Below are positions 2,150-42,851 of a stretch of 64,000 nucleotides of DNA, in pieces. A program made the translations under genes and the position numbers. Under the pieces are notes generated by a model, which had not been told where the DNA came from, did not search any database, and saw nothing but the letters and a program-made list of their open reading frames with translations. The stretch is from Macrostomum lignano (lineage: Eukaryota), in NCBI GenBank assembly GCA_002269645.1, contig NIVC01000036.1, positions 1 to 64,000 of the forward strand, written 5' to 3'. Positions within the stretch are counted from its first letter, which is position 1. Each line of letters begins with the position of its first letter.

Positions 2150-3031
2150 ATGAGCATGCATGTGTATACAGACACGAGCCAATGCCAACCGATTCCAGAG
2201 TGTGCAAGTTGGAAGGCCGCTATGGCAGACGCAGATGTTGCAGCAGCAGCAGCACTACACCAGCTGCGGGCTGTCTGCTGCGTTACGCACCGTCGGGGAC
2301 AGACGTTGAGTACGACCTCTGCCAGCCCGAGTGGCCAGACTTCGCTGTCAATCAATGTGGCAACGCCATCATTGCCGGACTCGTCAACTCTCTCGTTTGC
2401 CGCCTCCGTCCTGCCTGTCAGGCAGCGGAGCAGCTGCGGCTCGAAGTCCACCGCCGGAGCCGCCGCCAGACGCGCTGATTTACCGGCCGTTGCGCTGCCT
2501 GCCGAGCGGCGGCGGTGACGCGGGCAGGGGCTTGCAGACTCTGCCGCACCCGTCGTCAATGCGACAGCGACAGGCGGCCAACCATGGCAGCGAGAGGCCT
2601 GCAGCCGAACGCGAGTAACTCGACAGACATCGACTCGGAGATTTGGATCCGTCGAAGTGGCGGCGGGCAGCTGTCGATATGGACGACGGTTCAAGCGAAG
2701 GAGCTGCTGAGGGCAGCAGCAGCAGCATCTCTGCTTCTGTTCACCATCCCTGTCGAGCCATCGCAATCCACACAGACACGCCAGCAGTGACTTGGACGGC
2801 ACAGACGCTCTAAGCGGCATCGAACCCGCATCCACCGTAGCTGCGGTGGGAATGAACAGCTACTGCGACTTCCGGCAGGCAACACCTGCGGCAGCAGCAG
2901 CAGCCAAGACGCAGCGGACCAAGCAGAACCAGCCAATGCAACTGGTTGCTACCCAGCAACAGCACAGACTGCAGTACTACTGCCACTGCCCGGAAGGAAA
3001 TGCCGATGAAGAATCGACAAGCTTATTTTGA
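2150..3031. other. GC-rich coding-like island, frame and strand unresolved
   Basis: Its composition and CAG runs resemble local exons. Several overlapping ORFs are present, but I recognise no domain. Confidence 0.2.
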
Positions 3032-4577: not shown

Positions 4578-5174
4578 CACTCTGGGGGGGGGGGGGCTGG
4601 CGCAGCTAAAAATAAAGGTGCAAAAGTAAAGCGGAAAATTTTTTATACTCTATCACCCAAATAGATCAGCAATGGGTAAAAAATCAATATTTTAATAGAG
4701 CAATATTTCAGACTCGTATTATATTTATAGCATCAACATTGTCCAATTGACGCAAATGATACAAAGGATTTACAAAACATAATTAGACAATCAGTCGTTA
4801 TATAAGAGAATCGGAATTATCAGTGTGAATCGCTAGTGTGAATAGTCATCACAATATACTAAATCTCTAATAAAATACTATAGTAGTTGCAGTAGCTAGA
4901 ATATTTGCAGCAGACTTGGCACGCCTAACAATGTCAATTAGTTCAGTCTAGTGCGCCCTGCATGTCTAACAGGCCTTTAGCCTTCTCCATCTGGTGCAGA
5001 AAGTCGTAGAACTCGGTCAAGGACAGCTCTGCAACCGAGTCAGGGAAGTGAGATAAAAGTTATGAATAAAAAACACTATTTATAATATTTCTGGCAAAGT
5101 GTACTCTAAAGTCCACATTGATTACTATTTAAGAAAAGTTATCAAAGGTAAGTCAAGATTTTCATATAGGTAAA

Positions 5175-6325
5175 TTGAGATTGAGATGAGATGTGATGTG
5201 ATGAGATTTGATGAAATGAGATGTGATGTGATGCGATGTGATGAGATGAGATGAGATTTTATGCAATGAGATGTGAGAGATGAGATTTGATGTGATGAGA
5301 TGTGATGTGATGAGATTTGATGTGATGAGATGAGATGTGATGTGATGAGATGTGATGTGATGAGATGTGATGAAACTTGATATGATGAGATGAGATGTGA
5401 TGAGATGTGATGTGATGAGATGTGATGAGATGTGATGAGATGTGATGTGATGAGATGTGATGAGATGTGATGTGATGAGATCAGATTTGATGTGATGAGA
5501 TGTGATGTGATGAGATTTGATGAAATGAGATGTGATGTGATGTGATGAGATTTGATGTGATGAGATGAGATGTGATGTGATGAGATGTGATGTGATGAGA
5601 TGTGATGAAACTTGATATGATGAGATGAGATGTGATGAGATGTGATGAGATGTGATGTGATGTGATGAGATGTGATGAGATGTGATGTGATGAGATGAGA
5701 TTTGATGTGATGAGATGTGATGTGATGAGATTTGATGTGATGAGATGAGATGTGATGTGATGAGATGTGATGTGATGAGATTTGATGCGATGAGATGAGA
5801 TGTGATGTGATGAGATGAGATTTGATGTGATGAGATGTGATGTGATGAGATTTGATGTGATGAGATGAGATGTGATGTGATGAGATGTGATGTGATGAGA
5901 TGTGATGAAACTTGATATGATGAGATGAGATGTGATGAGATGTGATGAGATGTGATGAGATGTGATGTGATGAGATGAGATTTGATGTGATGAGATGTGA
6001 TGTGATAAGATTTGATGAAATGAGATGTGATGTGATGCGATATGATGAAACTTTATATGATGAGATGAGATGTGATGAGATGTGATGTGATGAGATGAGA
6101 TTTGATGTGATGAGATGTGATGTGACGAGATTTGATGAGATGAGATGTGATGTGATGCGATGTGATGAGATGTGATGTGATGAGATTTGATGAAATGAGA
6201 TGTGATGTGATGCGATATGATGAAACTTTATACGATGAGATGAGATGTGATGAGATGTGATGTGATGAGATGAGATGAGATTTTATGCGATGAGATGTGA
6301 TGAGATTGGAGAGATGAGATGAAGC
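5175..6325. repeat. (GATGT/GATGA)n pentanucleotide satellite
   Basis: Direct inspection. Confidence 0.95.
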
Positions 6326-9569: not shown

Positions 9570-9759
9570 TCTTTTCTCCTCTCCTATCTCCCCTCTTCTC
9601 TCGCCTCGCCCCACTTCTCTCTCCTCTCATCTCCCCCTTTTCTCTTCTCTCCCCTCTTGTCTCTCCTCTCCTCTCTTCTCTCTACTCTCCTCTCTTCTCT
9701 CTCCTCTCCCCTCTCCTCTCTCCTCTCATCTCCCCATTTTCTCTTCTCTCCCCTCTTGT
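9570..9759. repeat. CT-rich simple repeat, left half of the retroelement target (right half 14179-14310)
   Basis: Polypyrimidine low-complexity DNA on both sides of the insertion. Confidence 0.85.
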
Positions 9760-9773
9760 TGTTGTTGTTGTTG

Positions 9774-12700
9774 TTACTCCCGGCCGGTTGGATCCGGGGG
9801 GCGTGTCTGCGCCCCTACCGTGCGGAGGAAATCGAGCGCGCGGAGGCCGTCCGTCGAGAGGACGGCCAGGGACGGGTTTGGCCCTAGGGTGCGGGCCCGA
9901 AGGTCGTCAAGGGCCCGGCAGTGCAGGAGGACGTGGGCCACGTCTTCGTCGGCGGCCCCGCAGCGGGGGCAGGTGGCGGCGGTGTCCAGGCCGATCCGGT
10001 GCCGATACCAGCGTAGGAGCGGTGAGTGGCCCGTGCGCAGCTGGGCGAGGGTCACCGCGTCGGCCCGGTTAAGGCGTGGCCGCGGGGCGGCGATGGCGGT
10101 TGCCAGACGGTGGGTGGCGCAGTGCGGGTCGGCCGCGTTGGCTTCGCGGGTGCGCTCGGCGAGGACCCGGCGGAGGGCGGCCCGCGCTGACCCGAAGTCG
10201 ATCGGCGTCTCGTTCTGGGGGAGGCCGGCCGCGGTCTTGGCGGTGACGTCCGCAGCATCGTTCCGCCGGAGGTCGCAGTGGCTGGGGACCCATTGCAGCC
10301 AGATTGGGAAGCGGGCGGCGACGTGGGTCAGCAGCGTCCAGATCTCCCGGCACGCTGGCGAGGAGGACTTGGACGGTCCCTTCTCGAGGGCTCGGAGCAG
10401 GGACTGCGAGTCCGTCAGGCAGCGGAGGCCGCTCAGGGAGGCAAGGTCCGGCCTGGAGGCGACGTGCTGAAGCCCCAGCCGGAGAGCCGACTCCTCGGCA
10501 CGGAAGGAGGAAGAGTAACGGCCCGCAGCCTGCGACAGGTGGACTGGCGGCGCGGTCTTGCTGAAGATGACCGCCCCCGCTCCGCCGTTGAGGGTGCCCC
10601 CGGAGGCTGAACCGTCTGTCCAGAGCTCCAGGTCGGCGGGCGGGAGGCTCGCCAGCGTCTCCAGCGCGGCCAGCTTTCTGACGTGGGGCGCCTCCTCTCG
10701 GGAGGTCGCGGTCAGGAGGTCGCAGCGGATGGTGATCCGGCTGGTGTCGGACCATGGCGGCGGAGGGAGGTTTTCCTGCTCCCGGGGGAGGGTGGCCAGG
10801 CCGGCGGCGGCGCTCAGGTGCTGCGCCGAGTCGCGCCAGTTCCTACGGAAGGCCCCAGGCTCCCCGTGAGCGCGCAAGCGGGGCGTAGAGGTCTTGCCCG
10901 CTGCAGCGCGGAGCGGAGTCGGTTGTCGGTGACGGAGGGCTCGCTCGAACAGGGCTGCGCCTGCCGCCTCCGCTCTGGTCGCCAGGGGCACGAGGTCGGC
11001 CTCAGCCATGAGGGCGCCAATGGCGGTCGAGCGGCAGCAGCCAGTGATGACGCGGGCGGCCGATCGGTGCGCAATCTCGACTTCGTCCCGGCAGGAGTCG
11101 GACGCGAAGGTGAGCCACGTGGAGGCGCCGTGGAGCGCGGCCGCCTCCGCGTAGGTGCGGTAGAGCTGGGCGAGGCGCTGGCCGTCCTGGCCCCAATCGC
11201 GGCCCGCGAGGCAGCGTAGGACGCCGGTGCGCTGCTGGAGGGCGCGGCGCCGGAGCTCGGCGTGGTGGCGGAAGGTCAGCTAGGAGTCGAGGTGCACTCC
11301 CAGGAGCCTCGGATGCAGCTCGAACGGAGCTGGCGAGTCGCCGAGGAGGATGCGCGGCTGGACCTTTCCGTTGACCTCCCGGGGGTCGAGCGAGAAGAAA
11401 GCGACGACCGACTGGTTCGGCTCAGGTCCACCTTCCAGGTTTGGGACCAGCGCACGAGCCAGTCGGCCGCCGGTTGCAGGGCCCGCTCACACTCCCGAGG
11501 GGTGGTCCCTTGCGCGCCGAAGGTGCTGTCGTCGGCGTACGCCAGCGTGAGGCAGTTCGTGGGGCGCCGTCCAGGAGGTCGTCCATGTAGATCACCCACA
11601 GGATCGGGGCGAGGACCGACCCCTGCGGCAGCCCCTCGGAGAACACGGTTGGCTTGCAGGCCGCACTAACCCACCGCACGAAGGCCCTCCTGTCGGAGAG
11701 AAATCCCTTGAGCCAGCGGATGAGGCACGTGGGGATCCCCTTCCGACCGAGCTTGACGATGAGGGCGGCTCTCCAGACGCGGTCGTAGGCTCTGGAGAAG
11801 TCTGCAAGGAGCAGAGCGGTGCGGGCTGCCGGCTTCTTGGCCTGGAAACCGTCAAAAATGTACTGGGCCGCCGCGGCGATGTGCTCCTCCGTGGAGCGGC
11901 CCTGACGGAAACCGGCTTGCGACGGGTGGAGAGCGTCATTTGCCTCGAGGATGTAGGACAGCCGCTCGTTCACCATCTTCTCCGCGAGCTTGCCCAGGCA
12001 GCTGAGGAGGCTGATAGGGCGGAAGCTGGATGTCAGGCCGGCTGGCTTGTCCGATTTGGGGATCGGGCGGATCTCCGCAAGGCGCCACGGGGCGGACACC
12101 TCCCCCGTCCTCCACGAGAGGTTCAGGAGGTCCAGGAGGCAGCGGAGCCCCAGGTCGGACAGATGCTTCAGCATGATGTTCGCGACACCGTCCGGTCCCG
12201 GGGCCGAGCGGTCCGGCAGGCGCACCAAGGCGCGGCGGAGGGCGTCGGGCTGGAAGTCGGAGCAGGGGCCGCTGCGGAGGCCTTGGCAGCTGCAGGGGGC
12301 GCGGAGCGTGTGACGGGCTTCTTGGATGACCGGCCGGTCTTCCGCCTTGTTCTTGGGGAGCCTGCTGACGGCCGCGTACTCCCGGCAGAAAAGCGCGGCC
12401 TTCTGTTTGTCGGAGACGGCCGGTGCCCCCGTGGAGCCCTGGATGGCAGCCGACGAGGGGGTGCCCTGGGACCGTCCGTCGAGGGCCCGGATGATCCGCC
12501 AGAGGTCGGCGGAACACAGGTCGTGACCCGGGTCAGTGATGAAATCACGCCACAGCGACTCCTTGGCGCGGCAGATGGCGTGAGCAGCCGCGGCGGCAGC
12601 AGCCTGGTACGCGGCCGAGAGCGCCGGGTCGTCCGGGCTCGCGCGAAGCGCTTCGAGCGCCGCGCGGCGGGCGGTGCAGGCCGCCTCGGCTTCCGGGCAC

Positions 12701-14136
12701 CACCAGGCGATCGGGGCGCGCCGGCAGCCTCTCGGGATGGCCGCCTTGGCGGCGCTGGTGACGGCGGACGCGAACCGGTTGGCGGCGACGGGCACCGTGC
12801 GTGGGGGCGCTCCGGCCAGCTGGCCAGGGCCTGGTCGAGGGTCCGCTGGAACAGGTCCCAGTCCGCCTTGTGGTAGGCGTACCGCGTCAGGCGCTTGGAG
12901 CTGGAGCGGGCCGGGCCAGAGGCTGCGATGTCGATGATGATCGGCAGGTGGTCTGAGCCGATGTGCTCCCCGGTTCGCCACTCGATCCGGTCTTGCCAGG
13001 AGGCGTGGGCGAAGGAGACGTCAGGGGAGCTCGGCAGGCCGCGGGGGCTGATCCTAGTTGGGGAGCCGTCGTTCAGAGCGACCAGGTCGTAGGTCGTCGC
13101 CCAGTCTTCGAGGGCCCTGCCCAGCTCGTCGTCGTCCGCCGAGGCGTCCCACATCCCGTGGTGGGCGTTGAAGTCGCCCAGCACCAACGAGTCCCGTGAA
13201 ACGGGGATCCAGTCGGGCTCGAAGGCGTCCGTGCGGCCGTCTGCGGCGCGGACCGGCGGGAGGTAGATGTTGATCACATCCAGGGGACGTGGTAGCCGGG
13301 GGTCGTGGATACGGAGGCCCGAGGCTTCGGCGGACGTGGCGTGGGTGACGAGCTCGCCTAGTGGAAGGTCGGCGAATTGAATGCCCTCCTTGACAAGGAA
13401 GCAGACGCCCCCGTGGTGGGTTCTGGCTGCCTCCCCGTCGCGGCCGATGTTGCGGTCCTTCCGGCCAGCGATCTGCCACCCTTTGAGGCGTGGGGCCGCT
13501 GTGTTGCCGGACAGGTTCGTCTCCTGGATGCAGGCGACGTCGGCGCCCTGCTTCTCCAGGAAGTGGAGCAGTTCCAGCTTGCGGGAGCGGAGCCCTGCCG
13601 CGTTGAGCTGGACGATGCGGAAAGCCGCCCCGCTGTTGTTCGGCGCCCCGCCCGCGCTGGTTGCGCCATCAGGGGGGCGGGGGTGCCGGTGCGGGGTTCG
13701 GGGAGGTGGAGTCGTAGCCGTTGGCGTCTGGTGGGTGCCAGTGGGGCCTGCAGCCGCGGAGGGGGCCGGAGTCGCAGCGGGCTGCGGCGCTGAAGCGGCA
13801 GGCTGGTGGGCGCAGGTGGGACAGTGCCGCGGTGCCTTGTCCCGGTGGAGCCGGTTGATAGCCGCAATAGTGAGGCGGGAACAGCGGCGGTGCCACCACA
13901 GGCCGCAGTCGGAGCAGCAGGTGGAGTAGCCCCTGGCTACCTCCGCACGGGAAGGCCGGCCCAGGGTTGGACTCGACGTCTCCAGCTCTGAGAAGCAGCT
14001 GAGCCAGGTGAGCTGGGAGGCCTGGCTCAGCGTGGAAAAACCCGGGGCGCTCGAAGACCCTCGCACGGGTCCGGGGTGGTGGCTGCACTTGGCCGGGCGA
14101 ACCCGGACGGTCCCGCCGCGTGAAGGCGGCAGCCAT
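9774..14136 (-). pseudogene. Retroelement polyprotein with 4 frameshifts and 1 internal stop
   Basis: APE motifs: LNAAG, QET, GDFNAHH, SDHLP. RT motifs: PIPK, FRPISL, PQGS, YADD. RNase H motifs: WTDGS, TDSQS, WVPSH. Zn finger CPRC...H...C. Frameshifts near 13945, 12800, 11570 and 11420; TAG at 11281-11283. Confidence 0.9.
13957..13998 (-). other. 2A-like StopGo ribosome-skipping peptide LLLRAGDVESNPGP
   Basis: Exact D(V/I)ExNPG-P consensus, in frame with the ATG at 14136. The skip site is after residue 59. Confidence 0.88.
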
Positions 14137-14171
14137 GGGAAGCGCGCGAGCGCGCTCCGGGAGGCGGAACC
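14081..14171 (-). ncRNA. HDV/CPEB3-like self-cleaving ribozyme at the element 5' end
   Basis: Hand fold: P1 GGUUCC/GGGACC; hairpin in J1/2; P2 UGGCUGC-C/G-U-GCAGCCA; P3 GCC/GGC; L3 UUCACGC; GU; P4 CCGGG-UUCG-CCCGG; J4/2 CCAA. Confidence 0.72.
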
Positions 14172-14500
14172 TCCCGACCTCTCCCCTCTTGTCTCTCCTC
14201 TCCTCTCTCTACTCTCTACTCTCTCCTCTCCCCTGTTCTCTCTCCTCTCCCCTCTTCTCTCCACTCTCCCCCCTCTCTACTCTCCCCTCTTCTCTTTCCT
14301 CTCCTCTCTGGCCGGCAGTTTTGCGCTAGTTTCAATATCTCGCCCTTAGGTTAAAAAGTTCGCCGACCTGTGCTCTAACAATTTAACCTTCGCTAAAATA
14401 TAAAAATAGTAATAAAGAAATTAACTTTTTAAGATGAAAGAAAAAGCTAAGCTAGAAAATTTAACCAAACGCGGCACTTTGGTCTGGATTTATAGGACAA

Positions 14501-22746: not shown

Positions 22747-23511
22747 TTAATTGTCATTCAAATTGAATTCATCCAGTAACAGGTCACGGAGTGGCCAGCC
22801 GACTTGTTCAGCTAGCCATTTTACCTCAATAATCAACAACGTCCGGTAATACGGCTGACGAGCCGCATTTAAGTTGTGCAGAATGTAACTCACTGCTCGG
22901 CGCCACGCGGCTATGGCCTGCTCGGCCATGAACTCCTGCCTGAGTACAATGCAGACTGGCCGTACTTGCGCTCGCTGTGGCAGCGGGCGGTCTAACTGCA
23001 GATGACCGATTCGCATAAGGTACTCTTTGAGAGCCGCAATTAGCTGCTTGATATGCGCCTGCCATTCAGGCGTCAGTTGGTCCATGAAAGCGCCGAAGTC
23101 AGCGCCCATTGCAGCATACCGCTGTACATCCTGATTTCCAGGGGCGTATAGATAACTGGCAGCCGCACAGCAAGTTGGCGGTGGGTGCGGAACTGCGGTT
23201 TGCTGAGGCGGCGGTTGCTGCTGAGACTGGGGCGGCGGTTGCTGCTGAGACTGGGGCGGCGGTTGCTGCTGAGACTGGGGCGGCGGCTGCTGCTGCTGCT
23301 GGGGCATCGACTGCTGCTGCTGCTGGGGCATCGGCTGCTGTCGAGGCTGGGGCGGCGGCTGCTGCTGCTGGGGCGGCGGCTGCTGCTGCTGCTGCTGCTG
23401 GGGCGGCGGCTGCTGCTTCTTCTTCTTCGGGGCGCCTCCGTTCCGGCTAGGCCAATCTGGAGGGGGGCGTGGACCCCGAGGGGAGCCGCCCCATGCTGCG
23501 TAGTCTGACAA
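22747..23511 (-). CDS. Orphan ORF: Q/P-rich tract plus ~130-aa helical domain; first 32 codons derive from the retroelement 3' end
   Basis: 254-aa ORF. The non-repetitive C-terminal half stays open in otherwise AT-rich surroundings. No family recognised. Confidence 0.45.
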   Translation of the reverse strand: MSDYAAWGGSPRGPRPPPDWPSRNGGAPKKKKQQPPPQQQQQQQPPPQQQQPPPQPRQQPMPQQQQQSMPQQQQQPPPQSQQQPPPQSQQQPPPQSQQQPPPQQTAVPHPPPTCCAAASYLYAPGNQDVQRYAAMGADFGAFMDQLTPEWQAHIKQLIAALKEYLMRIGHLQLDRPLPQRAQVRPVCIVLRQEFMAEQAIAAWRRAVSYILHNLNAARQPYYRTLLIIEVKWLAEQVGWPLRDLLLDEFNLNDN

Positions 23512-25470
23512 TGGCCTCCGGGGACCCCATCAGGTCGCCCGGGGCCAGGCCGCTTCTTCTCCGGAAGTGGTCACCGCAGGGGCAGTGAAGGAGCAGATGC
23601 TCAGCCGAGTCCACCACGCCGCAATCGGGGCAGGCGGGGGACTGTTCCAAGCCCAGGCGGTGTCTGGTGCTAAAGTTGATGGTGCTGGCGCCGGACCGGA
23701 GCTGGTTGACCAGGACCTGGAGACGTCTAGGGAGGCTGGTCGGCGGCTGCAGTCTCGCCGGCATGTCGCGGCTGATAACCTTGCTGAGTGAGACATCGAA
23801 CTGGACGCGGCCGGCCTCGGCCACTTCCCACGGTGGGGGACCGAGGGGTCGGTGGGCCTGGGGCATCCTGTCCAATACCTCGCAACATTCCAGCTCCCGC
23901 GCTGCGCGCCTCCAGCAGCCGCGAAATTGACGACGGGCGTCGAGGTCCCTGTCTGGGAGGCGCTGATTGACCCCCTCGGCCTGATTCGGCCAGTTGGCGG
24001 CTTCGAAGGCGCGGTTTTTGAGGCCCGGGGTGGTGACCGCTGTCGCGATGCTCTGCGATGGCAATCCGTCCGGGAGGCGAGCCATCCGCTCTCTCAGCGT
24101 GCACGCGCGTTCGATGGCAACGTGGCTGAGGGGCGGCAGCTCGGCGATGCTAAGGAGATTTTCAGTGCGGGCCGTGGATATGCAGCCAGTAATCAGGCGC
24201 GCGCATGCGTTCTGCTGGCGCTCAACTAGGAGCCTGGTGCTCAGTGCCGCTCCCGCAAGCCATACGCCGCTGCCGTAGTCTGCCACAGCTCGGATAGTGG
24301 CAACGTAAACGGTGCGGAGGATGCTCTGCGTCGCACCCGTTTGCCGGTGTGCGATGGCCTGCAGTGGGCGTCTTCTGGCAGCCATGCGGCGACGGATATC
24401 TTTGGCGTGCTCCGCGAACCCAAGGTGGTCGTCGAACTTAACGCCGAGGAAGACCGGGTTGGGCTCGAAACGAAGCTCGCTGCCGCCGATGCTGAGTTCG
24501 ACTCTGGTCTTGCCGCGGTTCTCGTTGGGGCACAGGGTGAAAGTGCTGTAACTGCACTTCCCAGTGCTGAGCACGACCTTGTTCTGGTTGCACCAGCGGG
24601 CCACGGAGTCCAGAGCCGGTTGCACGATGTGCCCGTAGCTTTCGAGGTCCGTATGGCGCGCCAGGATGGCCGAGTCGTCGGCATACAGACTGATCTCGGC
24701 TTCCGGCGATGCTTCCGCGATGGCAGTTAGCAGGTCGTTAACGTAGACCAGCCAAAGCAGAGGGGCGATCACTGAGCCTTGGGGCAGGCCTTCCCGGAAG
24801 ATGCGCTCTCTGCTGAGGCTATTGCCGAATCAGACGCGCGCTCTCCTGTCGCTGAGGAAGCTGTTGGTCCAGCGCAGGACGCAAGCGGGGACTCCTAGCT
24901 TCTCAAGCTTGCAGATCAGAGACTTCCGCCACACCTTGTCGTAGGCTCTGCTGAAGTCGAGTAAACAGAGGATCGCTCTAAGCGTAGGAGTCTCTTCCAG
25001 CCCGTTGAAGATTCCAGCAGGAAGTACAGCCTTTGGTGCGCCAGCCGTTCTGCGACCTTGGCAATGCAACTGGTGAGGGCGACGGGGCGATACGAACCCG
25101 GGTCGTCAGCCGGTTTGCCGCGTTTTGGGATCGGGATGATAATCGCCCTGCGCCACTGGTAGAGGCATTGTCCGCTGAGCCAGGCCTTGTTGATCAGGTC
25201 AAGTAGTCGCTGCTCGGTCCATTTGGGGAGACGCTTGAGCATCTCGTTGGACACTCCGTCCGGGCCGGGGCTCTTCCTGGATTTCAGCAACCTCAGGGCC
25301 TGCTTAAGTTCCACAGCGGAGAAGGGGAACTCTTCGAAGAGATGCCTCTTCTCCCGCAGACATTCCATTGTTCATCTCTGGGTGGTATTCGCGGTGGCGG
25401 CGGGCTCGGGATCGTGTTTGGCCTCGCCATCTTTCTGGGCCGCCACATGGTAGAAACCCAGAGATCTAAC
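23417..25470 (-). mobile_element. Second Ingi-like element, 3' segment: RT with deletions, RNase H absent, CCHC finger, (GAA)4 tail
   Basis: SPGPDG, PIPK, YRPVAL, DFSRAYD, PQGS, YADD, CPDC..H..HC. In-frame TGA at 24830; deletion near 25010; RNase H deleted near 23750. Confidence 0.9.
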
Positions 25471-26540
25471 AGTGGAATGCCTGCGGGAGAAGAGGCTCCG
25501 ACCACCTGCCACCTCAGTCGCCCTAGGTGCCGCCTCCAATGGCCCCAGGACAAGACCGGCTGGTGCAACGGCTGCAGAAGTGGCTGCTCCGCCTGCTCCA
25601 ACTGCGACCTCTAGTGGCCTGCCCCATCTGACAACCCTCCGGTCCGCACTCCCCTGGACCTGCCGGAAGCGCGGAGAGCGTCAGAGAGCGGGCCGGCCAA
25701 CAAGAAAGCAGGCCTGCAGCACTGTTCGGACTGCAGCAAGGTCATCCGCAGGAACAGCTACAGCGTCCAGTGCACCAGCTGCAGCGGGTGGCTCCACCTC
25801 AAATGCAGCAGCCTCACTACTGTCAAGCAATACTCAGTGTCATTTGAAGGCCCGTGCTGTAGGCACGCGAACCAGCCCCCAGCTCAGCGCCGGAACGCTC
25901 AAGCCCCCCGACCCGCCAGGGGAGCTAGCCGGCCCGACCCGCCGCCCCTTCCTCAACCTGAGGGCGACGCCGAACCTGCCCCGAACGGCCAAAAGCCAAA
26001 AAACTGCAAAAACAAACAGCGCCCAACGGGGAGGGGAGGAGTGCTGATCCTGGTTTGCGATGACGTCCCCTTCAAGAATCCTGAAGTCAGCAGGGGCGGC
26101 CTGCTCGACTACGCAGCGGTGACCATCTGCCCGGCTGCTGTTGGCCAGATCCAATTGGTGGCGGTCTACGCTTTGCCCAATAGCAACCAGCGCGCGGAGG
26201 ACAACTGGCTCCCAGCCTGGTCAGACACACTGGTTGCGCCCCGCACGGTGATTGCCGGCGATTTCAATGGCCATGGACACTGGGACAGCCATCAACCTGA
26301 GGACGAGAGAGAAGACAGCATCGAGGGGTGGGCTAGCAACCGGGGCCTCCACCTTGGCAACCGCGAGGATGCCCACACGTGGACCAACCCGGCGACAGGC
26401 AGCCTGAGCTGCCCGGATATCACTTGGTGTTCCGGCAATCTTGCCGGCTACGTCAGGACGTCGTGGAGCACCTCCGAGGACCTTGGAAGTGACCACCTGC
26501 CTATTACCTTCACCCTCTCCAGAGACAAGCAGGCCAAATG
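25471..26540 (+). mobile_element. Inverted 5' segment of the second element: PHD finger plus C-terminal half of APE
   Basis: CSDCSK...CTSCSGWLHLKC; GRGGVLIL, GDFNGH, PDIT, SDHLP. The N-terminal APE motifs are missing. Confidence 0.85.
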
Positions 26541-27605
26541 TCTCCACTACAGAACGTGTCATAGGCTACCTTTAAATTTCCTAAATTTTAGTCTTCCTAC
26601 CTAAAAGTGCAAAAAACTGCTGAAAATTCACATTTTTTACTAAATCCTCCATAGCGCCGCTCCACTTTTACCAACCATCTTCAAATTTGACACAAACAAT
26701 CTTCAACTATTTTGACACAATTGTGTAAAGTTTCGAGTATCAAAGTTGATCCTGAATGGCGCTGTGCACTTTTAAAGTTAGGCTGCTTTTGTCGGCAAGA
26801 GAGCCACCCCAACCCCCACTCACCTGCCTCTCCCAATCTGGAATAGGGTGTAAATAGGTTTTAAAATGACTAACTTTTAGCTGCCATAAATTTGCTCCAT
26901 GTGAAGCACTTTTACTTCAAATTTGACACTATTCTTTATTGACTCATTCTCTGATTAGATTTGAGGCTTTAAAAAGTGGAGCATTAAGAATCTAGTTTAT
27001 AGAACATTGGATTTAGGGCACTGGATTCCCAAACTCAGAGGGGTAAGATTGCCCTTTGGTCTGTTGTTCATAAAGATATATGCCTTTTTGGCAAGGGCTG
27101 CTAAAGCATTAGGCCAAATATAAAATACCATGTGCTTCTAGCAATGAGCAGTAAGTAATTGCAATTTATCAAAAATGAATTCATTCAACTATTAATCCGT
27201 ACTATTGGCAAGTAGCAGATAAGTAGTGAGGAAGGCATATTATTGACTAAAATATTTGCATTCAATAATATTTGATATTTGAATTGGTTCTGTGGAATAT
27301 TTGAGTTAAATCAAATAGGTTCAGAAATTCAAATATATTAGAATATCTAAGTAAATATCTAGTTTCTTGCGTTGATTTGAATGGTAATTATCATAATATT
27401 TTCTAAAAAATAAAACAATTAATTATTTTTTGAGCTTAGGATAGGGACTTTAATCTTTGAACCAATCCTAAAAATTAACCTATGTGGCCTAAATATACAA
27501 CAAGACTAAATCAGATCCCAATTATTTTCATAATACATTTATTAGCTTTTATTTATGAATCTAGACTAGTCATTTGTGCTTTTGAAAAAAAATTAATTGT
27601 TTCAG

Positions 27606-29388
27606 CTTCTTTCAAAGCATTGGCTGCTGGTGCTGATCTCAGTAGCAGCTTATAATTTATTATTAACAACTGATGCATCTCGAAATCTAATTCGTATTGT
27701 GAGTCACAACAATGTTGGCGAGTTTATCACTTATCGGTTTACTAAGCTGGCTGATAAAGGTGCGAAAATTTTGGTTGTCACCACTGAGCCAAGGCCTGGA
27801 CAAACTGATGTGTCAGCGGCCTTTGATCCTGTCACCTCTTTGGCTAGTTTTCGTTTGATTGTGCCGCCTCAATTAGGCACAGGGACTGATAAGAGACAGG
27901 CTCACGTGCCACTTGGATTTTGCTTTTTAACATCGGTGCCGCCTCAGGTAATTCTGCTGTTTTATGGCTGTGAAACTTTTGATTTTGTTATTTCAGGTTT
28001 TTTTTAATTTTTTATGTAAAATTGGGGTAGATATAAATGTTTGAAAAATGAGAATGTATGTGTGAATAACTGATTTGAACTGATTTGTGTGAATCAGTAG
28101 AATGGATTTGTGTGAATCGGTAGATAGGATTTGTGTTGTCAGGTACAATGCATTTGTGTGAATCGGTAGATAGGATTTGTGATGTCAGGTACAATGCATT
28201 TGTGTGAATCGGTAGATAGGATTTGTGATGTCAGGTACAATGCATTTGTGTGAATCGGTAGATAGGATTTGTGATGTCAGGTACAATGCATTTGTGTGAA
28301 TCGGTAGATAGGATTTGTGATGTCAGGTACAATGCATTTGTGTGAATCGGTAGATAGGATTTGTGATGTCAGGTACAATGCATTTGTGTGAATCGGTAGA
28401 TAGGATTTGTGTTGTCAGGTACAATGCATTTGTGTGAATCGGTAGATAGGATTTGTGATGTCAGGTACAATGCATTTGTGTGAATCGGTAGATAGGATTT
28501 GTGATGTCAGGTACAATGCATTTGTGTGAATCGGTAGATAGGATTTGTGATGTCAGGTACAATGCATTTGTGTGAATCGGTAGATAGGATTTGTGATGTC
28601 AGGTACAATGCATTTGTGTGAATCGGTAGATAGGATTTGTGATGTCAGGTACAATGCATTTGTGTGAATCGGTAGATAGGATTTGTGATGTCAGGTACAA
28701 TGCATTTGTGTGAATCGGTAGATAGGATTTGTGATGTCAGGTACAATGCATTTGTGTGAATCGGTAGAATTTATCTATAGGAATATAAAAATGGATTGAC
28801 TCTGCACCCTTCACAGGACCATGTCCCCATGCGCGAGCTCCGCCATCGTCTTGCCTCAATGATGCTGTCTCAGAAGCAATCTCTACTAAGCTTTGTGGCA
28901 AACGAAGATCGAGGCAAACTCGCTCACTGGGCTAGTCAATCGGTTGCCATGGCAACGCTAGTTAAAGTTTCCCAACGCTGGCCAAGCACTGCATCAGGGC
29001 TATAGGCCGGATGGGCACTGCTCACTTTGCTCCAGAGGATTTGACCTTGTCAGCCCAGCTCAGGCCCCATAATCCTGCTATGCGAACTATGCTTAACCAG
29101 CTAAAGCGTGCGGGTATTAATCAACAGTTTCCATCGATAACTTGTCGCCAAGCTTGGAGTCTGGACTCAAATTTAGCTTCTTCATCTTCATCGTCTGGTT
29201 GTGTCTGTCAGCTAGCTGCCTGTCTGCTATGGTACCCCTGCGGCTTGTTGTCGTGTGCGGCTGCTCAGCCTGCTGTTGATGGCTCCGCGCCAACCTGCAG
29301 AAATGAGTTCGGCTTGCGCTCTTGTCGCATCTGTCACCAGTTTCATTTCCGAGCTGACAATGTCTCAGCTTGTCCGTTGTACGCTTGA
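27606..29388 (+). CDS. OAF: Out-at-first (OAF) homolog; exons 27606-27947 and 28817-29388; one-base frameshift at 28968-28970; no ATG found
   Basis: Signal-peptide-like start, then GFCFLT, EDRG, and WYPCGLLSC...GLRSCRICHQFHF (cf. OAF WYPCGLKYC...GIKTCRKC). Phase-0 GT-AG intron. Confidence 0.82.
28095..28768. repeat. 46-bp minisatellite in OAF intron
   Basis: About 14 near-identical units of GTGAATCGGTAGATAGGATTTGTGATGTCAGGTACAATGCATTTGT. Confidence 0.95.
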
Positions 29389-30756: not shown

Positions 30757-33700
30757 ATGACGTCATCGGCAGGCCTGGACCGAGTTCAAGCTTGGCGCGG
30801 CCAAACCGAGTCGGCCAGACGCCAGGAGACTCTGCGCGATCTGCACCGTTTGGATGGCAGCGCCCGTGGCATCGAGCGCGAATTTCGGCAGCTTTTGTCC
30901 GGTAGGCGCGTTGGCGCCGTTGCTGGTTGCGCCGAATTGGCGCCGCTGATCGAACTAGAGACGGAGCTGAATACCACTAGGCTGCAGGACCGGCGCCAAC
31001 TCCAAGCGGGAGCCAACAAAATCCGAGCAGCTGTGGAATCGTTTAAAAAGGAATTTTCCCAACCGGCCACAGATCCAGACGCCGTGGAGCCGCCAAGCGC
31101 GGATTTCGTCTCGCGCGCCAAACAGGCCGTTGAAACCATTGAACGACTGGTGCTGGAATTGAAAGAATCTCAGCGATCGAAATACGATGAGCTCACTAAT
31201 GAAGAGCGTCTGTTGGCACAGGAAGTGACCGCCTTAGATAAACGAATTGACGCCTGGAAGGTGGAGGATGCGGCCGCTTCCGTTAAGTAAGAATCTTAGT
31301 GGATTGTGTACTAATATGTTTTAGCTTTTTTATCTATAGTAAGCTTTAACCAGTTGAGGTGTAGTGCTTTCGAATGAATCCTTTGTACTGGCATCAATTA
31401 ATCGGCTTTTATAATTCTTTGTTAATTTCTGGGCCTTATTAGCTGAGACCGAGGTCGTATCTGCAGCTGGATAGAAACTTTAAGGCCAATAAAAATCGTC
31501 TTCTTCTCCAGCCAGCCAATAAACTCGTCCCGCCAGATAGCTAATAAAATCGTCCCCCCCTCAGACAGCTAAAAAACTCCCCCCAGCCAGCCAATTAAAT
31601 CGTTCCCCAGCCAGCCAATAAAATCGCCACCAGCCAATAATATCGCCCCCACAGCCAGCCAATTAAATCGTCCCCCAGCCAGTCAATTAAATCGTCCGCC
31701 AGCTAGCCAATAAAAATCGTACCCCAGCCAGCCAATAAAACCGCCCCCCAGCCAGCCAATTAAATCGTCCCCCAGCAAGTCAAGAAAATTGTACCTCAGC
31801 CATGCAGTTGAAATCGTTGCAATAGCAAGCCAAGCCAGTAGCAATCTCTCCTTAGACAGCCTATAAAAATAGTTAGATTAGCCATCAGCCAGCCAATAAA
31901 GATCGTGCCTCAATCAGCCAATAAGAATTGCCTTCAACCAATCAATAGTAATCGTCTTTTTTAAACCATCTCGCTCCAGGCCCAAAGCTGTTCCATCTGG
32001 CGCCGCAGCCCCAGCCACAACCCGAACAGACATTGCGGACGCTCTGCCGCCCGAGGTGGCCGAATTCGAACGCTATCTGACCCAGACCGGCGGCCACACA
32101 GGCGGCTGGGAGGACGTGGATCATCGGGCTTTTCTACGCGCTAGGCAGCGGTTCGAAGGAGCCAGCGCCAGGAGCGGCAGCCTTGTTGATGAAGCTCTTT
32201 CCAGCCTGCCTACTAAGACGGCGCAGCAGGTCTGTGGCTAGGGAAGACATTGGGAGATCTGATATGTCAGTGAGGGATCTAAGATGTCAGTGAGGGATCT
32301 GAAATGTCAGTTAGGGATCTGAGATGTCAGTGAGGGATCTGAGATGTCAGTTAGGGATCTGAGATGTCAGTGAGGGATCTGAGATGTCAGTGAGGGATCT
32401 GAGATATCAGTTAGGGATCTGAAATGTCAGTGAGTGATCTGAGATGTCAGGGAATGATCTGAGATGTCAGTGAGTGATCTGAGATGTCAGGGAATGATCT
32501 GAGATGTCAGTGAGAGATCGGAGATGTCAGTGAGGGATCTGAGATAACAGGGAAGGATCTGAGATGTCAGGGAAGGATCTGAGATGTCAGGGAAGGATCT
32601 GAGATGTCAGTGAGAGATCGGAGATTTCAGTGAGAGATCGGAGATGTCAGTGAGGGATCTGAGATAACAGGGAAGGATCTGAGATGTCAGGGAGGAATCT
32701 GAGATGTCAGTGAGGGATCTGAGATGTCAGGGAAGGATCTGAGATGTCATGGAAGGATTTGAGATGTCAGGGAAGGATCTGAGATGTCAGTGAGAGATCG
32801 GAGATTTCAGTGAGAGATCGGAGATGTCAGTGAGGGATCTGAGATAACAGGGAAGGATCTGAGATGTCAGGGAAGGATCTGAGATGTCATGGAAGGATTT
32901 GAGATGTCAGGGAAGGATCTGAGATGTCAGTGAGGGATCTGAGATAACAGGGAAGGATCTGAGATGTCAGGGAGGAATCTGAGATGTCAGTGAGTGATCT
33001 GAGATGTCAGGGAAGGATCTGAGATGTCAGGGAAGGATCTGAGATGTCAGGGAAGGAAGAATCAATTCAAGCATACTACTAAACAAAAAAATCAAGTAGT
33101 GAGTACGTCAAATAATTGGTTTTGGCCTGCTCTCAGGTACGCGAGCATGAGCAGTGGTACACCGAGTACAATCGGTTGCTACGGCAGAAGAAGTCGGCCA
33201 TCGCTAGATGGCGCCAACAGAAAGCCGACGCTGCCGCTGCCGCTGCTGTCGACGCGGCTGAGGCTGACGCCGCAATCGACAGCGACGAGGAAGCCGAGCG
33301 GCGTCGTGCCGAACGACTGCGCCAACGCGCCGAAGCTGAGAGACGCGAGCGCGCCTCCGAGTTGGGCGCCTGGAGAGCGGAGAAATCCGCCAAAGAGAAG
33401 CGCGAGGCCGAAGAGCGCCGAAAGAAGCAGGCTGAGGCGGCGGCGCGGAAAGCAGAGGCTGAACGGCAGAAGCAGGTGAGGACTGCTTTTTGTGATTCAC
33501 TGAATATCATAATTGAGTCAGTGAATGAGCAATTGAGTAAGTGAATGAGCAATTGAGTCAGTGAATGAGCAATTGAGTTAGTGAATGAGCAATTGAGTAA
33601 GTGAATGAGCAGTTGAGTCAGTGAATGAGCAATTGAGTTAGTGAATGAGCAATTGAGTAAGTGAATGAGCAGTTGAGTCAGTGAGTGAGCAATTGAGTCA

Positions 33701-35114
33701 GTGAATGAGCAATTGAGTCAGTGAATGAGCAATTAAGTCAGTGAGTGAGCAATTGAGTCAGTGAATGAGCAGTTGAGTCAGTGAATGAGCAATTGAGTCA
33801 GTGAGTGAGCAATTGAGTCAGTGAATGAGCAATTGAGTCACTGAATGAGCAATTGAGTCAGTGAGTGAGCAATTGAGTTAGTGAATGAGCAATTGAGTCA
33901 GTGAATGAGCAGTTGAGTCAGTGAATGAGCAATTAAGTCAGTGAGTGAGCAATTGAGTCAGTGAATGAGCAGTTGAGTCAGTGAATGAGCAGTTGAGTCA
34001 GTGAGTGAGCAATTGAGTCAGTGAATGAGCAATTGAGTCAGTGAATGAGCAATTAAGTCAGTGAGTGAGCAATTGAGTCAGTGAATGAGCAATTGAGTCA
34101 CTGAATGAGCAATTGAGTCAGTGAGTGAGCAATTGAGTTAGTGAATGAGCAATTGAGTCAGTGAATGAGCAGTTGAGTCAGTGAGTGAGCAATTGAGTCA
34201 GTGAATGAGCAATTGAGTCAGTGAATGAGCAATTAAGTCAGTGAGTGAGCAATTGAGTCAGTGAATGAGCAGTTGAGTCAGTGAATGAGCAATTGAGTCA
34301 GTGAGTGAGCAATTGAGTCAGTGAATGAGCAATTGAGTCACTGAATGAGCAATTGAGTCAGTGAGTGAGCAATTGAGTTAGTGAATGAGCAATTGAGTCA
34401 GTGAGTGAGCAATTGAGTCAGTGAATGAGCAATTAAGTCAGTGAATGAGCAATTAAGCAAGTGAATGAGCAATTGAGTCAGTGAATGAGCAATTGAGTCA
34501 GTGAATGAGCAATTGAGTCAGTGAATGAGCAATTGAGTCAGTGAATGAGCAATTGAGTCAGTGAATACGCTCAGTCAGGATGTATAGCAGTTCCAACTTT
34601 CTCAATGTCAGTAGGTTTGTACACTCTATGTGCTGGAATGGCATCGTTGAGAAAGTGCTGATCGAACCGCCACTCCGACCGCCAGGCTGAGCTTCGCCGT
34701 CAAGCCGACGAGTTCCGCGCCAGACGCGAGGCGGAGCGCGCCGAAGCCGCCGAACAGGAGGCCAGACGGGAGGCTGAAGAGCGCGCCCGTCGTCGAATTC
34801 AAACCGAAGCGGACGCCGGCCGGCTGGCCGACCGAAATCGTCAGATTGTTGACGAACGTCTGGCCCGACGGCAGCAGCAGGCTGAGCAGGAGGAGGAACG
34901 CCAGCGTCGGCTGGCTTCGTTGAAAGCCGCCGTTGAGGTTCGGGCAGTTCGCGACCCGAACCGGCTGATGCAGCCCACGGCAGTCTGTCGGGAGCGAATG
35001 GCGGCCGCGGCTGATGATCAGCGATCGGCGGCGGCGGCTGGTGGACGGCCGGTGGCCGGGGCGGCGTCCATGCCGCATCGAGCTGTGCCGTCCTGGCGTA
35101 GGGGCCTGTCTTGA
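30757..35114 (+). CDS. CCDC112: Coiled-coil domain-containing 112; exons 30757-31286, 31980-32229, 33137-33475, 34686-35114
   Basis: LPPEVAEFERYLTQTGGHTGGWEDVDH, HEQWY, RDPNRLMQPT and PHRAVPSWR match CCDC112 motifs. All three introns are GT-AG with consistent phases (2,0,0). Confidence 0.9.
31500..31930. repeat. Degenerate ~25-bp minisatellite in CCDC112 intron 1
   Basis: Units like CAGCCAGCCAAT(T/A)AAATCGTCCCC. Confidence 0.8.
32255..33058. repeat. 20-bp minisatellite in CCDC112 intron 2
   Basis: Units of GAGATGTCAG(TGAG/GGAA)GGATCT. Confidence 0.95.
33510..34565. repeat. 20-bp minisatellite in CCDC112 intron 3
   Basis: Units of GTGAATGAGCAATTGAGTCA. Confidence 0.95.
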
Positions 35115-37950: not shown

Positions 37951-37989
37951 AATAAATATTCATTATTGTGTTATTCAGATTCGGTTCAA

Positions 37990-42569: not shown

Positions 42570-42616
<47 letters not shown>

Positions 42617-42644
42617 GGATAGATCGATAGACAGATGGATAGAT

Positions 42645-42716
<72 letters not shown>

Positions 42717-42717
42717 C

Positions 42718-42752
<35 letters not shown>

Positions 42753-42784
42753 CGATAGACAGATGGATAGATAGAAAGATAGAT

Positions 42785-42851
<67 letters not shown>

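What the first reader, a model, noticed from the sequence alone, without database searches (positions are those of the whole stretch)
14081..14178. HDV/CPEB3-like ribozyme at the exact 5' end of a metazoan Ingi-like retrotransposon, containing the start codon
Seen: the first ~95 nt of the element fold by hand into the nested double pseudoknot order P1-P2-P3-L3-P3-P1-GU-P4-CCAA-P2. L3 (UUCACGC) is one base from the CPEB3 loop UUCACGU, and P4 is a perfect UUCG hairpin. The ORF AUG (14136) sits at the J1/2-P2 boundary. Known: trypanosome L1Tc/ingi and insect R2 elements use HDV-like ribozymes to release their 5' ends from host co-transcripts. Inference: this animal lineage uses the same strategy, and the fold may gate translation. 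Caveats: P1 is 6 bp rather than 7, and P2 has a bulge.
Basis: partly seen in the sequence, partly recalled or inferred. Interest (0 to 1): 0.85.

Follow-up and report, generated by a model that had tools for sequence, protein, structure and literature searches.

The report
HDV-like ribozyme heading a retrotransposon
The first ~90 bases of a decayed LINE-type retrotransposon fold like a hepatitis-delta-type self-cutting RNA, and seven related elements keep the same fold at the same spot, so it is very probably a real 5'-end-trimming ribozyme, a new example of a known trick.

Summary
The described fold is present on the minus strand at 14171-14081. It heads a 4.4-kb non-LTR retrotransposon (14178-9756) with this layout: ribozyme/AUG, a 2A peptide (GDVESNPGP), PHD-like finger, APE, RT, RNase H, a (CAA)6 tail and a 10-14 nt target-site duplication.

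In one GC-rich sequence the fold is not beyond chance. My loose descriptor hits shuffles 1.4 times on average. Rfam finds nothing.

The comparison with relatives carries the case. Seven related elements from metagenome contigs (about 30-50% APE identity) have the same double pseudoknot just upstream of, or overlapping, the start of their 2A-bearing ORF. P1, P2, P3 and P4 covary. P1.1 also covaries, although it was never a search criterion. L3 keeps U...CG and J4/2 keeps C..AA. In three insertions, homology begins exactly at the predicted cleavage G.

The validated drz-Spur-3 ribozyme also has a 6-bp P1.

Not supported as written:
- "Exact 5' end": 6-7 extra nt lie here.
- "Ingi-like": clade not established.
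- The start codon inside the ribozyme: its position is not conserved.

Cleavage was not tested. This is a new member of a known kind (R2, RTE, Baggins, L1Tc/ingi). The ribozyme-2A pairing deserves follow-up.

The parts
14179..14310 (.). [quoted passage not shown] Its last 10 nt (14188-14179, GAGGGGAGAG on the minus strand; 14 nt to 14192 if ACAA is counted) are the upstream copy of the target-site duplication.
   Evidence: (family D20)
14172..14178 (-). (G)UCGGGA: 6-7 nt between the target-site duplication and the predicted cleavage site. With G14171 and G14170 they form a 7-bp inverted repeat with CCUCCCG 14164-14158. They can also extend P1 at the expense of P4. Origin unexplained.
14081..14171 (-). 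HDV-like ribozyme core, 91 nt. Predicted cleavage is 5' of G14171. See the observation check for the full helix coordinates (P1, J1/2 hairpin, P2, P3, L3, J1/4, P4, J4/2). C14092 is the putative catalytic C. P1.1 is C14122-G14108 plus U14123.U14107.
13957..14136 (-). Leader ORF of 60 codons. It starts at AUG 14136 inside the ribozyme and ends in a canonical 2A ribosome-skipping motif, LLLRAGDVESNPGP (DVESNPGP = 13980-13957).
13800..13945 (-). PHD-like Cys/His finger (..STCCSDCGLWWHRRCS..CPTC), reached only after a frameshift near 13945. Its first CxxC appears disrupted.
   Evidence: compared with L001
12936..13610 (-). Apurinic/apyrimidinic-type endonuclease domain
   Evidence: PF03372 1e-10, PF14529 3e-16
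11566..12063 (-). Reverse transcriptase domain, N-terminal two thirds; the rest continues in another frame after a frameshift
   Evidence: (PF00078 4e-25)
10227..10634 (-). RNase H domain, followed by a C-terminal zinc knuckle. The ORF ends at TAA 9776-9774.
   Evidence: (PF00075 2e-9; zf-RVT weak)
9756..9773 (-). (CAA)6 3' tail of the element
9575..9755 (.). The same GA/CT-rich minisatellite resumes here. 9755-9746 (GAGGGGAGAG) is the downstream copy of the target-site duplication.

Best explanation
Window 14171-14081 (minus strand) encodes an HDV-like self-cleaving ribozyme that forms the 5' terminus of the RNA of a single-ORF APE-RT-RNase H non-LTR retrotransposon.

Inferred mechanism:
1. 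The element has no demonstrated promoter and is probably transcribed by read-through from upstream DNA, here a GA-rich minisatellite.
2. As the RNA is made, the nested double pseudoknot (P1/P1.1/P4 stacked beside P2/P3) folds. C14092 in J4/2 and the L3 U.G metal site catalyse scission 5' of G14171.
3. This removes host sequence but keeps the whole ribozyme on the element RNA, so every new copy inherits it.
4. The 8-bp hairpin in J1/2 would act like the P1.2 'pinch' domain that speeds up large HDV-like ribozymes.
5. Translation then starts on this uncapped, 5'-OH RNA within or just after the ribozyme. Here that is AUG 14136, 35 nt from the end.
6. The ribosome reads through the ribozyme core, and a 2A sequence (GDVESNPG|P) detaches the 60-residue ribozyme-encoded leader from the PHD-APE-RT-RNase H protein.

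Shown here:
- the fold;
- its conservation and covariation in relatives;
- element boundaries at G+1 in three relatives;
- the 2A motif and the domain order.

Inferred only: catalysis, co-transcription, the mode of translation, and the purpose of 2A.

This particular copy is a relic with at least three frameshifts, although all of its ribozyme helices are intact.
For: 1. Fold. All helices and joining strands are as described. The nested MFE reproduces P1, the J1/2 hairpin, P3 and P4.

2. Same fold at the same place in relatives:
- L001 251-378
- L045 501-628
- L010 960-1058
- L002 106-183
- L021 100-180
- L015 18-93
- L013 270-339
Each lies on the sense strand just upstream of, or overlapping, the start of an ORF with a 2A-like motif followed directly by APE or by a PHD-like finger and APE.

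3. Features I did not search for single these sites out. Among 30 descriptor hits in 539 kb, six have L3 position 1 = U, L3 positions 5-6 = CG and a Watson-Crick P1.1 pair. They are exactly the six in the right place. None of the other 24 has all three features.

4. Covariation on the structure-guided alignment A2:
- 95.5% of cells are paired.
- 16 of 22 pairs have changes on both sides.
- The covariation score is 0.776, against 0.234 for shuffles (0 of 500 reach it) and at most 0.13 for slid partners.
- The inner P1.1 pair is C-G in six, G-C in one and U-A in one.
- The outer P1.1 pair is G-C in three and U.U in five, as in CPEB3.

5. The catalytic-position C after P4, followed by AA, is present in all eight.

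6. Boundaries. In L001, L045 and L010 the upstream DNA is unrelated, and identity starts at the predicted G+1, give or take one T.

7. Bona fide insertion. A 10-14 nt target-site duplication and a (CAA)6 tail bracket the window element.

8. Precedent in papers read here:
- HDV-like ribozymes define the 5' ends of R2, R4, Dong, Baggins, RTE and L1Tc (PMC3774820 and PMC6765202).
- A conserved L3 G forms a reverse wobble with an L3 U (PMC3774820).
- A structured J1/2 accelerates cleavage (PMC4908430).
- drz-Spur-3, by my parse of its published primers, has a 6-bp P1 closed by G-C and a J4/2 of CCAAU.
Against: - No cleavage was tested, and no transcript data exist.
- Rfam's HDV-family models do not score the window or any relative, even at E<=10.
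- The fold alone is within chance for GC-rich sequence, and the MFE z-score is -1.0.
- P1-P4 pairing in the relatives was partly imposed by my own descriptor, so the covariation counts for those helices are inflated by ascertainment. P1.1, L3 and position are the independent evidence.
- In the window copy the base pair at the cleavage site is G-C, not the usual G.U. Five of the eight have G.U.
- 6-7 nt lie between the target-site duplication and G+1.
- With upstream sequence included, the predicted MFE extends P1 and destroys P4.
- No second copy of this family was found in the window or in the databases. The best relative is 66% identical in RT and 55% in APE. The family's own 5' consensus is therefore unknown.
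Confidence: 0.8

Rival explanations
1. The conserved 5' pseudoknot is a functional RNA or DNA element that does not self-cleave, at least not in this lineage. It could be an IRES-like platform for cap-independent translation, a binding site for the element's own protein, or an internal promoter at the DNA level like Pr77 of L1Tc. The 5' ends would then be set by transcription initiation.
For: R2 and L1Tc ribozyme regions are also proposed to act as an IRES or a protein-binding site, and Pr77 is an internal promoter (PMC6765202; PMC3383444). The ORF runs through the fold, in the same frame relative to L3, in six of eight elements. Three of those have no AUG conserved among them between nt +1 and the 2A motif, which hints at unconventional initiation. 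Element boundaries at G+1 would also fit transcription starting there.
Against: The conserved residues are the ones needed for HDV-type catalysis: L3 U and G, the P1.1 C-G pair, C then AA after P4, and G at +1. A mere scaffold would not need all of these. In known cases these roles accompany cleavage rather than replace it.
Confidence: 0.1
2. Chance: a double pseudoknot can be drawn in almost any GC-rich 100-nt stretch, and the resemblance to CPEB3 is coincidence.
For: The loose descriptor hits 68% of shuffles of the element. Other hits in the window (2459-2565 +, 23552-23680 +, 26246-26145 -) look like noise. Rfam is silent.
Against: Seven diverged relatives have the same architecture at the same position, with covarying helices and conserved catalytic-core residues that were not search criteria. 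No off-target hit has them (0 of 24). Homology boundaries fall at G+1.
Confidence: 0.04
3. The sequence conservation reflects coding constraint on an N-terminal leader peptide, not RNA structure.
For: The reading frame across L3 is shared: UUC ACG = Phe-Thr in the window and L001, and the frame is equivalent in L045, L010, L021 and L013.
Against: The leader peptides are otherwise unrelated (MAAAFTRRDRPG.. / MSACTRWSCH.. / ASCATTFTSVEV..). In L002 and L015 the region is not in the ORF at all, yet it keeps the fold. Paired positions change together, which coding constraint does not predict.
Confidence: 0.03

Closest known systems
L1TcRz / Pr77 of the trypanosomatid L1Tc/ingi elements
   Same: An HDV-like ribozyme occupies the first ~77 nt of a single-ORF APE-RT-RNase H non-LTR element. 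It cleaves at the element's first nucleotide, so it is inherited. The ORF begins with a 2A sequence (PMC3185411, PMC3383444, PMC3708506, PMC6765202).
   Different: The host is a kinetoplastid protist. Pr77 is also an internal promoter, which was not tested here. I did not compare sequences with Pr77. No trypanosomatid protein appeared among the best 120 RT homologues. Here a PHD-like finger follows 2A, the AUG lies inside the fold, and the L3/P1.1 are of CPEB3 type.
Mammalian CPEB3 ribozyme
   Same: L3 is UUCACGU versus UUCACGC here. J1/4 is GU, giving one C-G pair plus a U.U in P1.1. J4/2 starts with C and is followed by (G)AA. The overall double pseudoknot is the same (sequence from PMC5984629).
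   Different: CPEB3 is a single-copy intronic ribozyme with a 7-nt P1 (one C.A mismatch) and no retrotransposon context. Here P1 is 6 bp, P2 is bulged and J1/2 carries a hairpin.
HDV-like ribozymes of R2, R4/Dong, Baggins and RTE retrotransposons
   Same: They process the 5' end of a co-transcribed non-LTR element. The ORF follows without a cap, and translation-promoting activity has been proposed (PMC3774820, PMC6765202; for Ruminski 2011 I rely on citations and memory only).
   Different: They belong to other clades, some with restriction-like endonucleases and rDNA specificity. Many R2 ribozymes cleave inside the upstream 28S sequence and have J1/2 loops of 200-700 nt. No 2A peptide has been described for them in what I read.
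drz-Spur-3 (sea urchin) and drz-Agam-2 (mosquito)
   Same: By my parse of the published primers, drz-Spur-3 has a 6-bp P1 (GACACU/AGUGUC) closed by G1-C and a J4/2 of CCAAU. This matches the window's 6-bp P1, G-C closure and CCAA. L013's P1 (GACACC/GGUGUC) is nearly the same. Agam-2 ribozymes carry a P1.2 helix in J1/2 that accelerates cleavage (PMC4908430), like the window's J1/2 hairpin.
   Different: The drz-Spur-3 L3 is UCCCCGU, with two C-G pairs in P1.1. I could not read the original papers to check what its genomic context is.

Membership tests
HDV-like self-cleaving ribozymes | Nested double pseudoknot in the order P1-P2-P3-L3-P3'-P1'-J1/4-P4-J4/2-P2' | tested here: met
   Present in the window and in seven relatives. 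95.5% of cells are paired and 16 of 22 pairs show double changes. P1-P4 pairing was partly imposed by my descriptor.
HDV-like self-cleaving ribozymes | P1.1: one or two pairs between L3 and J1/4 | tested here: met
   C14122-G14108. Across the eight sequences the inner pair is C-G in six, G-C in one and U-A in one. The outer pair is G-C in three or U.U in five, as in CPEB3. This was not a search criterion.
HDV-like self-cleaving ribozymes | Conserved L3 U and G (the reverse-wobble metal site) and a catalytic C at the start of J4/2, followed by A residues | tested here: met
   L3 is U..CG. in all eight sequences and in none of the 24 off-target descriptor hits. C follows P4 directly in all eight; here it is C14092 followed by CAA. 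The C and AA were required by my descriptor. The role of the L3 G.U comes from PMC3774820.
HDV-like self-cleaving ribozymes | Cleavage 5' of the first P1 nucleotide (G+1), usually in a G.U wobble; P1 of about 7 bp | tested here: inconclusive
   G+1 is present. P1 is 6 bp in all eight. The closing pair is G-C in the window, L010 and L013, and G.U in the other five. drz-Spur-3 shows the same 6-bp P1 with G-C closure (my parse).
HDV-like self-cleaving ribozymes | Site-specific, Mg2+-dependent self-scission giving 2',3'-cyclic phosphate and 5'-OH ends | not testable with these tools
   Needs an in vitro transcription and cleavage assay.
HDV-like self-cleaving ribozymes | Match to a curated Rfam HDV-family model | tested here: not met
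   No HDV, CPEB3 or drz hit at E<=10 in the window region or in seven relatives. These models cannot encode pseudoknots and the family has little sequence conservation, so this counts for little.
5'-terminal ribozymes of non-LTR retrotransposons | Sense-strand ribozyme whose cleavage site coincides with the element's 5' boundary | tested here: met
   Exact in L001, L045 and L010. In the window copy the boundary set by the target-site duplication is 6-7 nt upstream of G+1.
Ingi clade (L1Tc/ingi) of non-LTR retrotransposons | RT-based phylogenetic placement with ingi/L1Tc | tested here: inconclusive
   No reference RT sequences were available. The best 120 RT homologues include no trypanosomatid protein. 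Named hits are Artemia, Branchiostoma, Araneus (R1-like), rotifers and Fusarium.
Ingi clade (L1Tc/ingi) of non-LTR retrotransposons | Single ORF with N-terminal 2A, APE, RT, RNase H and a C-terminal zinc finger; no ORF1 | tested here: met
   The architecture is compatible but not exclusive. Odon et al. (PMC3708506) report the 2A plus PHD arrangement in Crack and CR1 clade elements.
Ingi clade (L1Tc/ingi) of non-LTR retrotransposons | Pr77 sequence hallmark at the 5' end | not tested
   I had no Pr77 sequence in hand and did not write one from memory.
2A ribosome-skipping peptides | D(V/I)ExNPGP motif preceded by a hydrophobic, Leu-rich tract | tested here: met
   LAQLLLRAGDVESNPGP, ending at 13957. 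Skipping activity was not tested.

The most novel reading that the evidence does not exclude
The ribozyme and the 2A peptide form one cassette. An HDV-like ribozyme must sit at the extreme 5' end, and translation starts inside it or at its first nucleotide. Three relatives are open from nt +1 and share no conserved AUG upstream of the 2A motif. The first tens of codons are therefore dictated by RNA structure. On this reading, the N-terminal 2A of single-ORF non-LTR elements (Ingi, Crack, CR1, Rex1, L2 and others) exists to shed that ribozyme-encoded leader. The cassette would be shared from trypanosome L1Tc/ingi to animals and would explain why 2A always sits at the N-terminus in these elements.
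Probability: 0.3. Interest if true: 0.6.

Novelty: new member of a known kind. Interest (0 to 1): 0.4.

Why it matters
HDV-like ribozymes at the 5' ends of non-LTR retrotransposons are established for R2, R4, Baggins, RTE and L1Tc/ingi. Another lineage using one is therefore not a surprise.

Three things here are useful beyond that:

1. A diverged, CPEB3-like sub-family with a 6-bp P1, a bulged P2, and a U.U or G-C switch in P1.1. Rfam misses it completely. It could seed a better search model and bears on where the mammalian CPEB3 ribozyme came from.

2. The consistent pairing of the ribozyme with an N-terminal 2A peptide. The 2A literature I read describes the peptide in animal LINEs without mentioning ribozymes: the term occurs 0 times in PMC3708506 and PMC3894237. 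The pairing offers a testable reason for 2A's fixed position.

3. Reading frames that run through the ribozyme, in some families from nt +1 with no AUG. These make the elements a compact system for studying how uncapped, 5'-OH, highly structured RNAs are translated.

Tried and rejected
- Rfam at gathering and at E<=10, on the window and on seven relatives: nothing relevant.
- A second copy of the ribozyme in the window: none within 3 mismatches.
- Same-family copies elsewhere. Three protein searches gave at best 55% identity in APE and 66% in RT, so no family consensus or sister-copy test was possible for the window's own family.
- Long contigs carrying RT relatives (L061-L064): no ribozyme or 2A. 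They are probably truncated or decayed copies.
- Descriptor statistics as proof: rejected, because the loose descriptor is at chance level in GC-rich sequence.
- Other descriptor hits in the window (2459-2565 +, 23552-23680 +, 26246-26145 -): they lack the L3 and P1.1 signature, and the last lies antisense inside an APE ORF. Treated as noise.
- L003 and L028 have P1, P2, P4, J1/4 and J4/2 in the right order, but a long hairpin-bearing insert where P3/L3 should be. By-eye reading only; the relaxed search did not score them. I left them out as unresolved variants.
- A snap-back origin for the extra 5' nucleotides: 5 nt fit, the rest do not. Not adopted.
- Clade assignment from the supplementary RT alignment of Odon et al.: the file is not held.
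- Webb 2009, Webb & Luptak 2011 and Ruminski 2011 could not be read. What I say about them comes from citing papers or from memory.
Full report
**What is there**

The finding lies on the minus strand.

- P1: GGUUCC (14171-14166) pairs with GGGACC (14114-14109).
- J1/2: 31 nt, containing an 8-bp hairpin.
- AUG: 14136-14134.
- P2: GGCUGCC pairs with G[U]GCAGCC (14134-14128 with 14088-14081).
- P3: GCC pairs with GGC.
- L3: UUCACGC.
- J1/4: GU.
- P4: a perfect CCGGG-UUCG-CCCGG hairpin.
- J4/2: CCAA.

The CPEB3 comparison holds. The published CPEB3 construct reads GCG-UUCACGU-CGC, followed by its P1 3' strand, GU, P4, C-GAA-U and the P2 3' strand (primers in PMC5984629).

**The element**

The fold heads a GC-rich (~70%) insertion in AT-rich DNA. 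Going downstream on the minus strand, the parts are:

1. The AUG inside the ribozyme opens a 60-codon leader ending in a canonical 2A ribosome-skipping motif, LLLRAGDVESNPGP.
2. After a frameshift comes a PHD-like finger.
3. An APE endonuclease follows, then RT after another frameshift, then RNase H and a zinc knuckle after a third.
4. The ORF ends at a TAA stop and is followed by a (CAA)6 tail.

The same GA-rich minisatellite lies on both sides (family D20). GAGGGGAGAG is duplicated at 14188-14179 and 9755-9746. The duplication reaches 14 nt if ACAA is counted.

This is therefore a genuine target-primed insertion of about 4.42 kb, essentially full-length but decayed.

The target-site duplication places the boundary at 14178/14177. 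That leaves (G)UCGGGA between it and the predicted cleavage G14171. I cannot explain these nucleotides. They pair with CCUCCCG in J1/2, and in the precursor they can extend P1 at the cost of P4.

**Is it more than chance?**

On this sequence alone, barely.

- Rfam has no hit at gathering score or at E<=10.
- The nested MFE does recover P1, the J1/2 hairpin, P3 and P4, but its z-score is -1.0.
- A permissive HDV-type descriptor that I wrote finds the site. It also finds 1.36 sites per dinucleotide shuffle of the element, and about 4.5 per shuffle of the whole window.
- Adding a CPEB3-like L3 leaves 1 shuffle in 300.

**Relatives**

No close copy of this family exists in the window or in the protein databases. 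The best matches are 55% identical in APE and 66% in RT.

More distant relatives were recovered from two sources:
- contigs encoding APE homologues;
- a metagenome scan with an APE alignment, which gave 54 loci.

Seven of these loci carry the same architecture on the sense strand, just upstream of or overlapping the start of an ORF with a 2A-like motif. APE follows, either directly or after a PHD-like finger. The loci are L001, L045, L010, L002, L021, L015 and L013.

Their helices differ in sequence but stay complementary.

| Helix | Examples |
|---|---|
| P1 | GGUUCC/GGGACC, GCUUCC/GGAAGU, GCUUCC/GGGAGC, GGAUGU/GCAUCU, GGCUCC/GGAGCU, GACACC/GGUGUC |
| P2 5' strand | GGCUGCC, UGCGACC, UGCGGCC, GGAAGA, GAUGUCC, GAAGAU, ACCUUCC |

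Each P2 5' strand has its matching partner. Five of the eight show the same one-nucleotide bulge.

On a structure-guided alignment (A2), one search gives these counts:
- 95.5% of cells are paired;
- 16 of 22 pairs change on both sides;
- the covariation score is 0.776, against 0.234 in shuffles (0 of 500 reach it) and at most 0.13 when partners are slid.

**The ascertainment problem and how I dealt with it**

Five relatives were found with a descriptor that demands P1-P4 pairing. That part of the covariation is therefore partly built in. The independent evidence is in three features the descriptor did not ask for.

1. *Catalytic-core residues.* There are 30 descriptor hits in 539 kb. Six have U at L3 position 1, CG at L3 positions 5-6 and a Watson-Crick P1.1 pair. 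They are exactly the six that sit in the right place. None of the other 24 has all three features. PMC3774820 describes the L3 G as highly conserved and paired in a reverse wobble with an L3 U.

2. *P1.1 covaries.* The inner pair is C-G in six, G-C in one and U-A in one. The outer pair is either G-C or the U.U seen in CPEB3.

3. *Boundaries.* In three independent insertions (L001, L045, L010) the upstream DNA is unrelated, and identity begins at the predicted G+1. This is the pattern expected if the RNA's 5' end is made by cleavage at the base of P1.

- The 6-bp P1 and the bulged P2 are shared by the clade.
- By my parse of its published primers, the experimentally used sea-urchin ribozyme drz-Spur-3 has a 6-bp P1 closed by G1-C and a J4/2 of CCAAU. 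The window's G-C closure and CCAA therefore have a precedent.
- The J1/2 hairpin resembles the P1.2 domain shown to accelerate large HDV-like ribozymes (PMC4908430).

**The start codon**

The first in-frame AUG varies in position relative to G+1.

| Position of first in-frame AUG | Elements |
|---|---|
| Inside the ribozyme | window (+35), L021 (+10), L013 (+64) |
| Downstream of the ribozyme | L001, L002, L015 |
| None downstream of G+1 | L045, L010 |

- L001, L045 and L010 are open in frame from nt +1.
- In six of eight elements the ORF crosses L3 in the same frame.
- 'AUG inside the fold' is therefore not a conserved design. Translation through, or from the very start of, the ribozyme is common, and it is always followed by a 2A-type motif.

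That suggests, as inference only, that 2A serves to discard a leader whose sequence is dictated by RNA structure.

**Comparison with what is known**

HDV-like ribozymes at the 5' ends of non-LTR elements are established for R2, R4/Dong, Baggins, RTE and L1Tc/ingi. Roles in translation have been proposed (PMC3774820, PMC6765202, PMC3185411, PMC3383444).

L1Tc/ingi also carries an N-terminal 2A, and 2A-bearing single-ORF LINEs are known in many animals (PMC3708506). The 2A papers I read do not mention ribozymes.

The mechanism here is the known one. The lineage, the CPEB3-like core and the systematic pairing with 2A are the new parts.

'Ingi-like' is not established. The domain order fits, but RT homologues with names are arthropod, amphioxus, rotifer and fungal, and none is trypanosomatid.

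The host is unidentified. The nearest named APE homologues are animal. One related contig carries a multi-exon KH-domain gene, so these metagenomes contain eukaryotic host DNA.

**Verdict**

- The core interpretation is supported by comparative evidence but not by experiment.
- Several details are off: the exact 5' end, 'Ingi-like', and the start codon as part of the design.
- This is a new member of a known kind, of moderate interest.

Noticed in passing
window 13957-14136 (-); L001, L002, L003, L013, L015, L016, L017, L019, L021, L023, L028, L033, L038, L039, L045: N-terminal 2A-type motifs ([DG][VI]xxxPGP after a Leu-rich tract) occur in the window element and in 15 related loci. Variants such as DIHPHPGP and GIEPNPGP are among them.
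   Followed up: partly
window 9575-9773 and 14179-14310: The element has a (CAA)6 tail and sits inside a GA/CT-rich minisatellite whose unit contains ACAAGAGGGGAGAG. The target's own CAA next to the tail suggests microhomology priming. L010's upstream flank is also purine-rich (GGGAGGGGAAGGGGAGGGAGGG). A possible target preference was not tested.
   Followed up: partly
window 14172-14178 (-): 6-7 nt, (G)UCGGGA, lie between the target-site duplication and the predicted cleavage G. They are complementary to 14164-14158. Their origin is unexplained: 5' junction addition, partial snap-back, or a real leader.
   Followed up: partly
L015 1-17 versus 57-73; L001 219-250: Sequence just upstream of G+1 repeats part of the element itself. 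In L015 the 17 nt before G+1 equal the interior of P4. In L001 the first ~15 nt plus 6 upstream nt are tandemly duplicated. This suggests template switching or local duplication at 5' junctions.
   Followed up: no
L003 about 203-285; L028 about 630-750: Two 2A-bearing relatives have P1, P2, P4, J1/4 and a J4/2 of C(C)AAA in the HDV order. A 17-33 nt hairpin-containing insert replaces the short L3. They may be a variant or decayed form.
   Followed up: no
window 62723-63997 (-): There is another RNase H plus zinc-knuckle ORF (PF00075 5e-13), 29% identical to the element's C-terminal ORF. It is a second, different element of the same broad type, and its 5' part lies beyond the window end.
   Followed up: partly
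window 54298-55689 (-): An intact-looking 463-aa ATG-started ORF carries HTH and DDE domains of Tc1/mariner-type transposases.
   Followed up: no
window 23447-24772 (-) and 25837-26604 (+): A GC-rich block holds an RT fragment on one strand and an APE ORF (30% identical to the element's APE) on the other. These are remains of other non-LTR elements. I found no 2A or ribozyme signature there.
   Followed up: partly
window-wide, e.g. 5172-6000, 27944-28887, 32123-34250, 36737-37448, 37862-38857, 39744-40881, 41029-41800, 42399-43400, 47409-47984, 52059-53100: The window is unusually dense in long minisatellite arrays with periods of 8-72 nt. Many are more than 90% uniform, and several have strong GC skew.
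   Followed up: no
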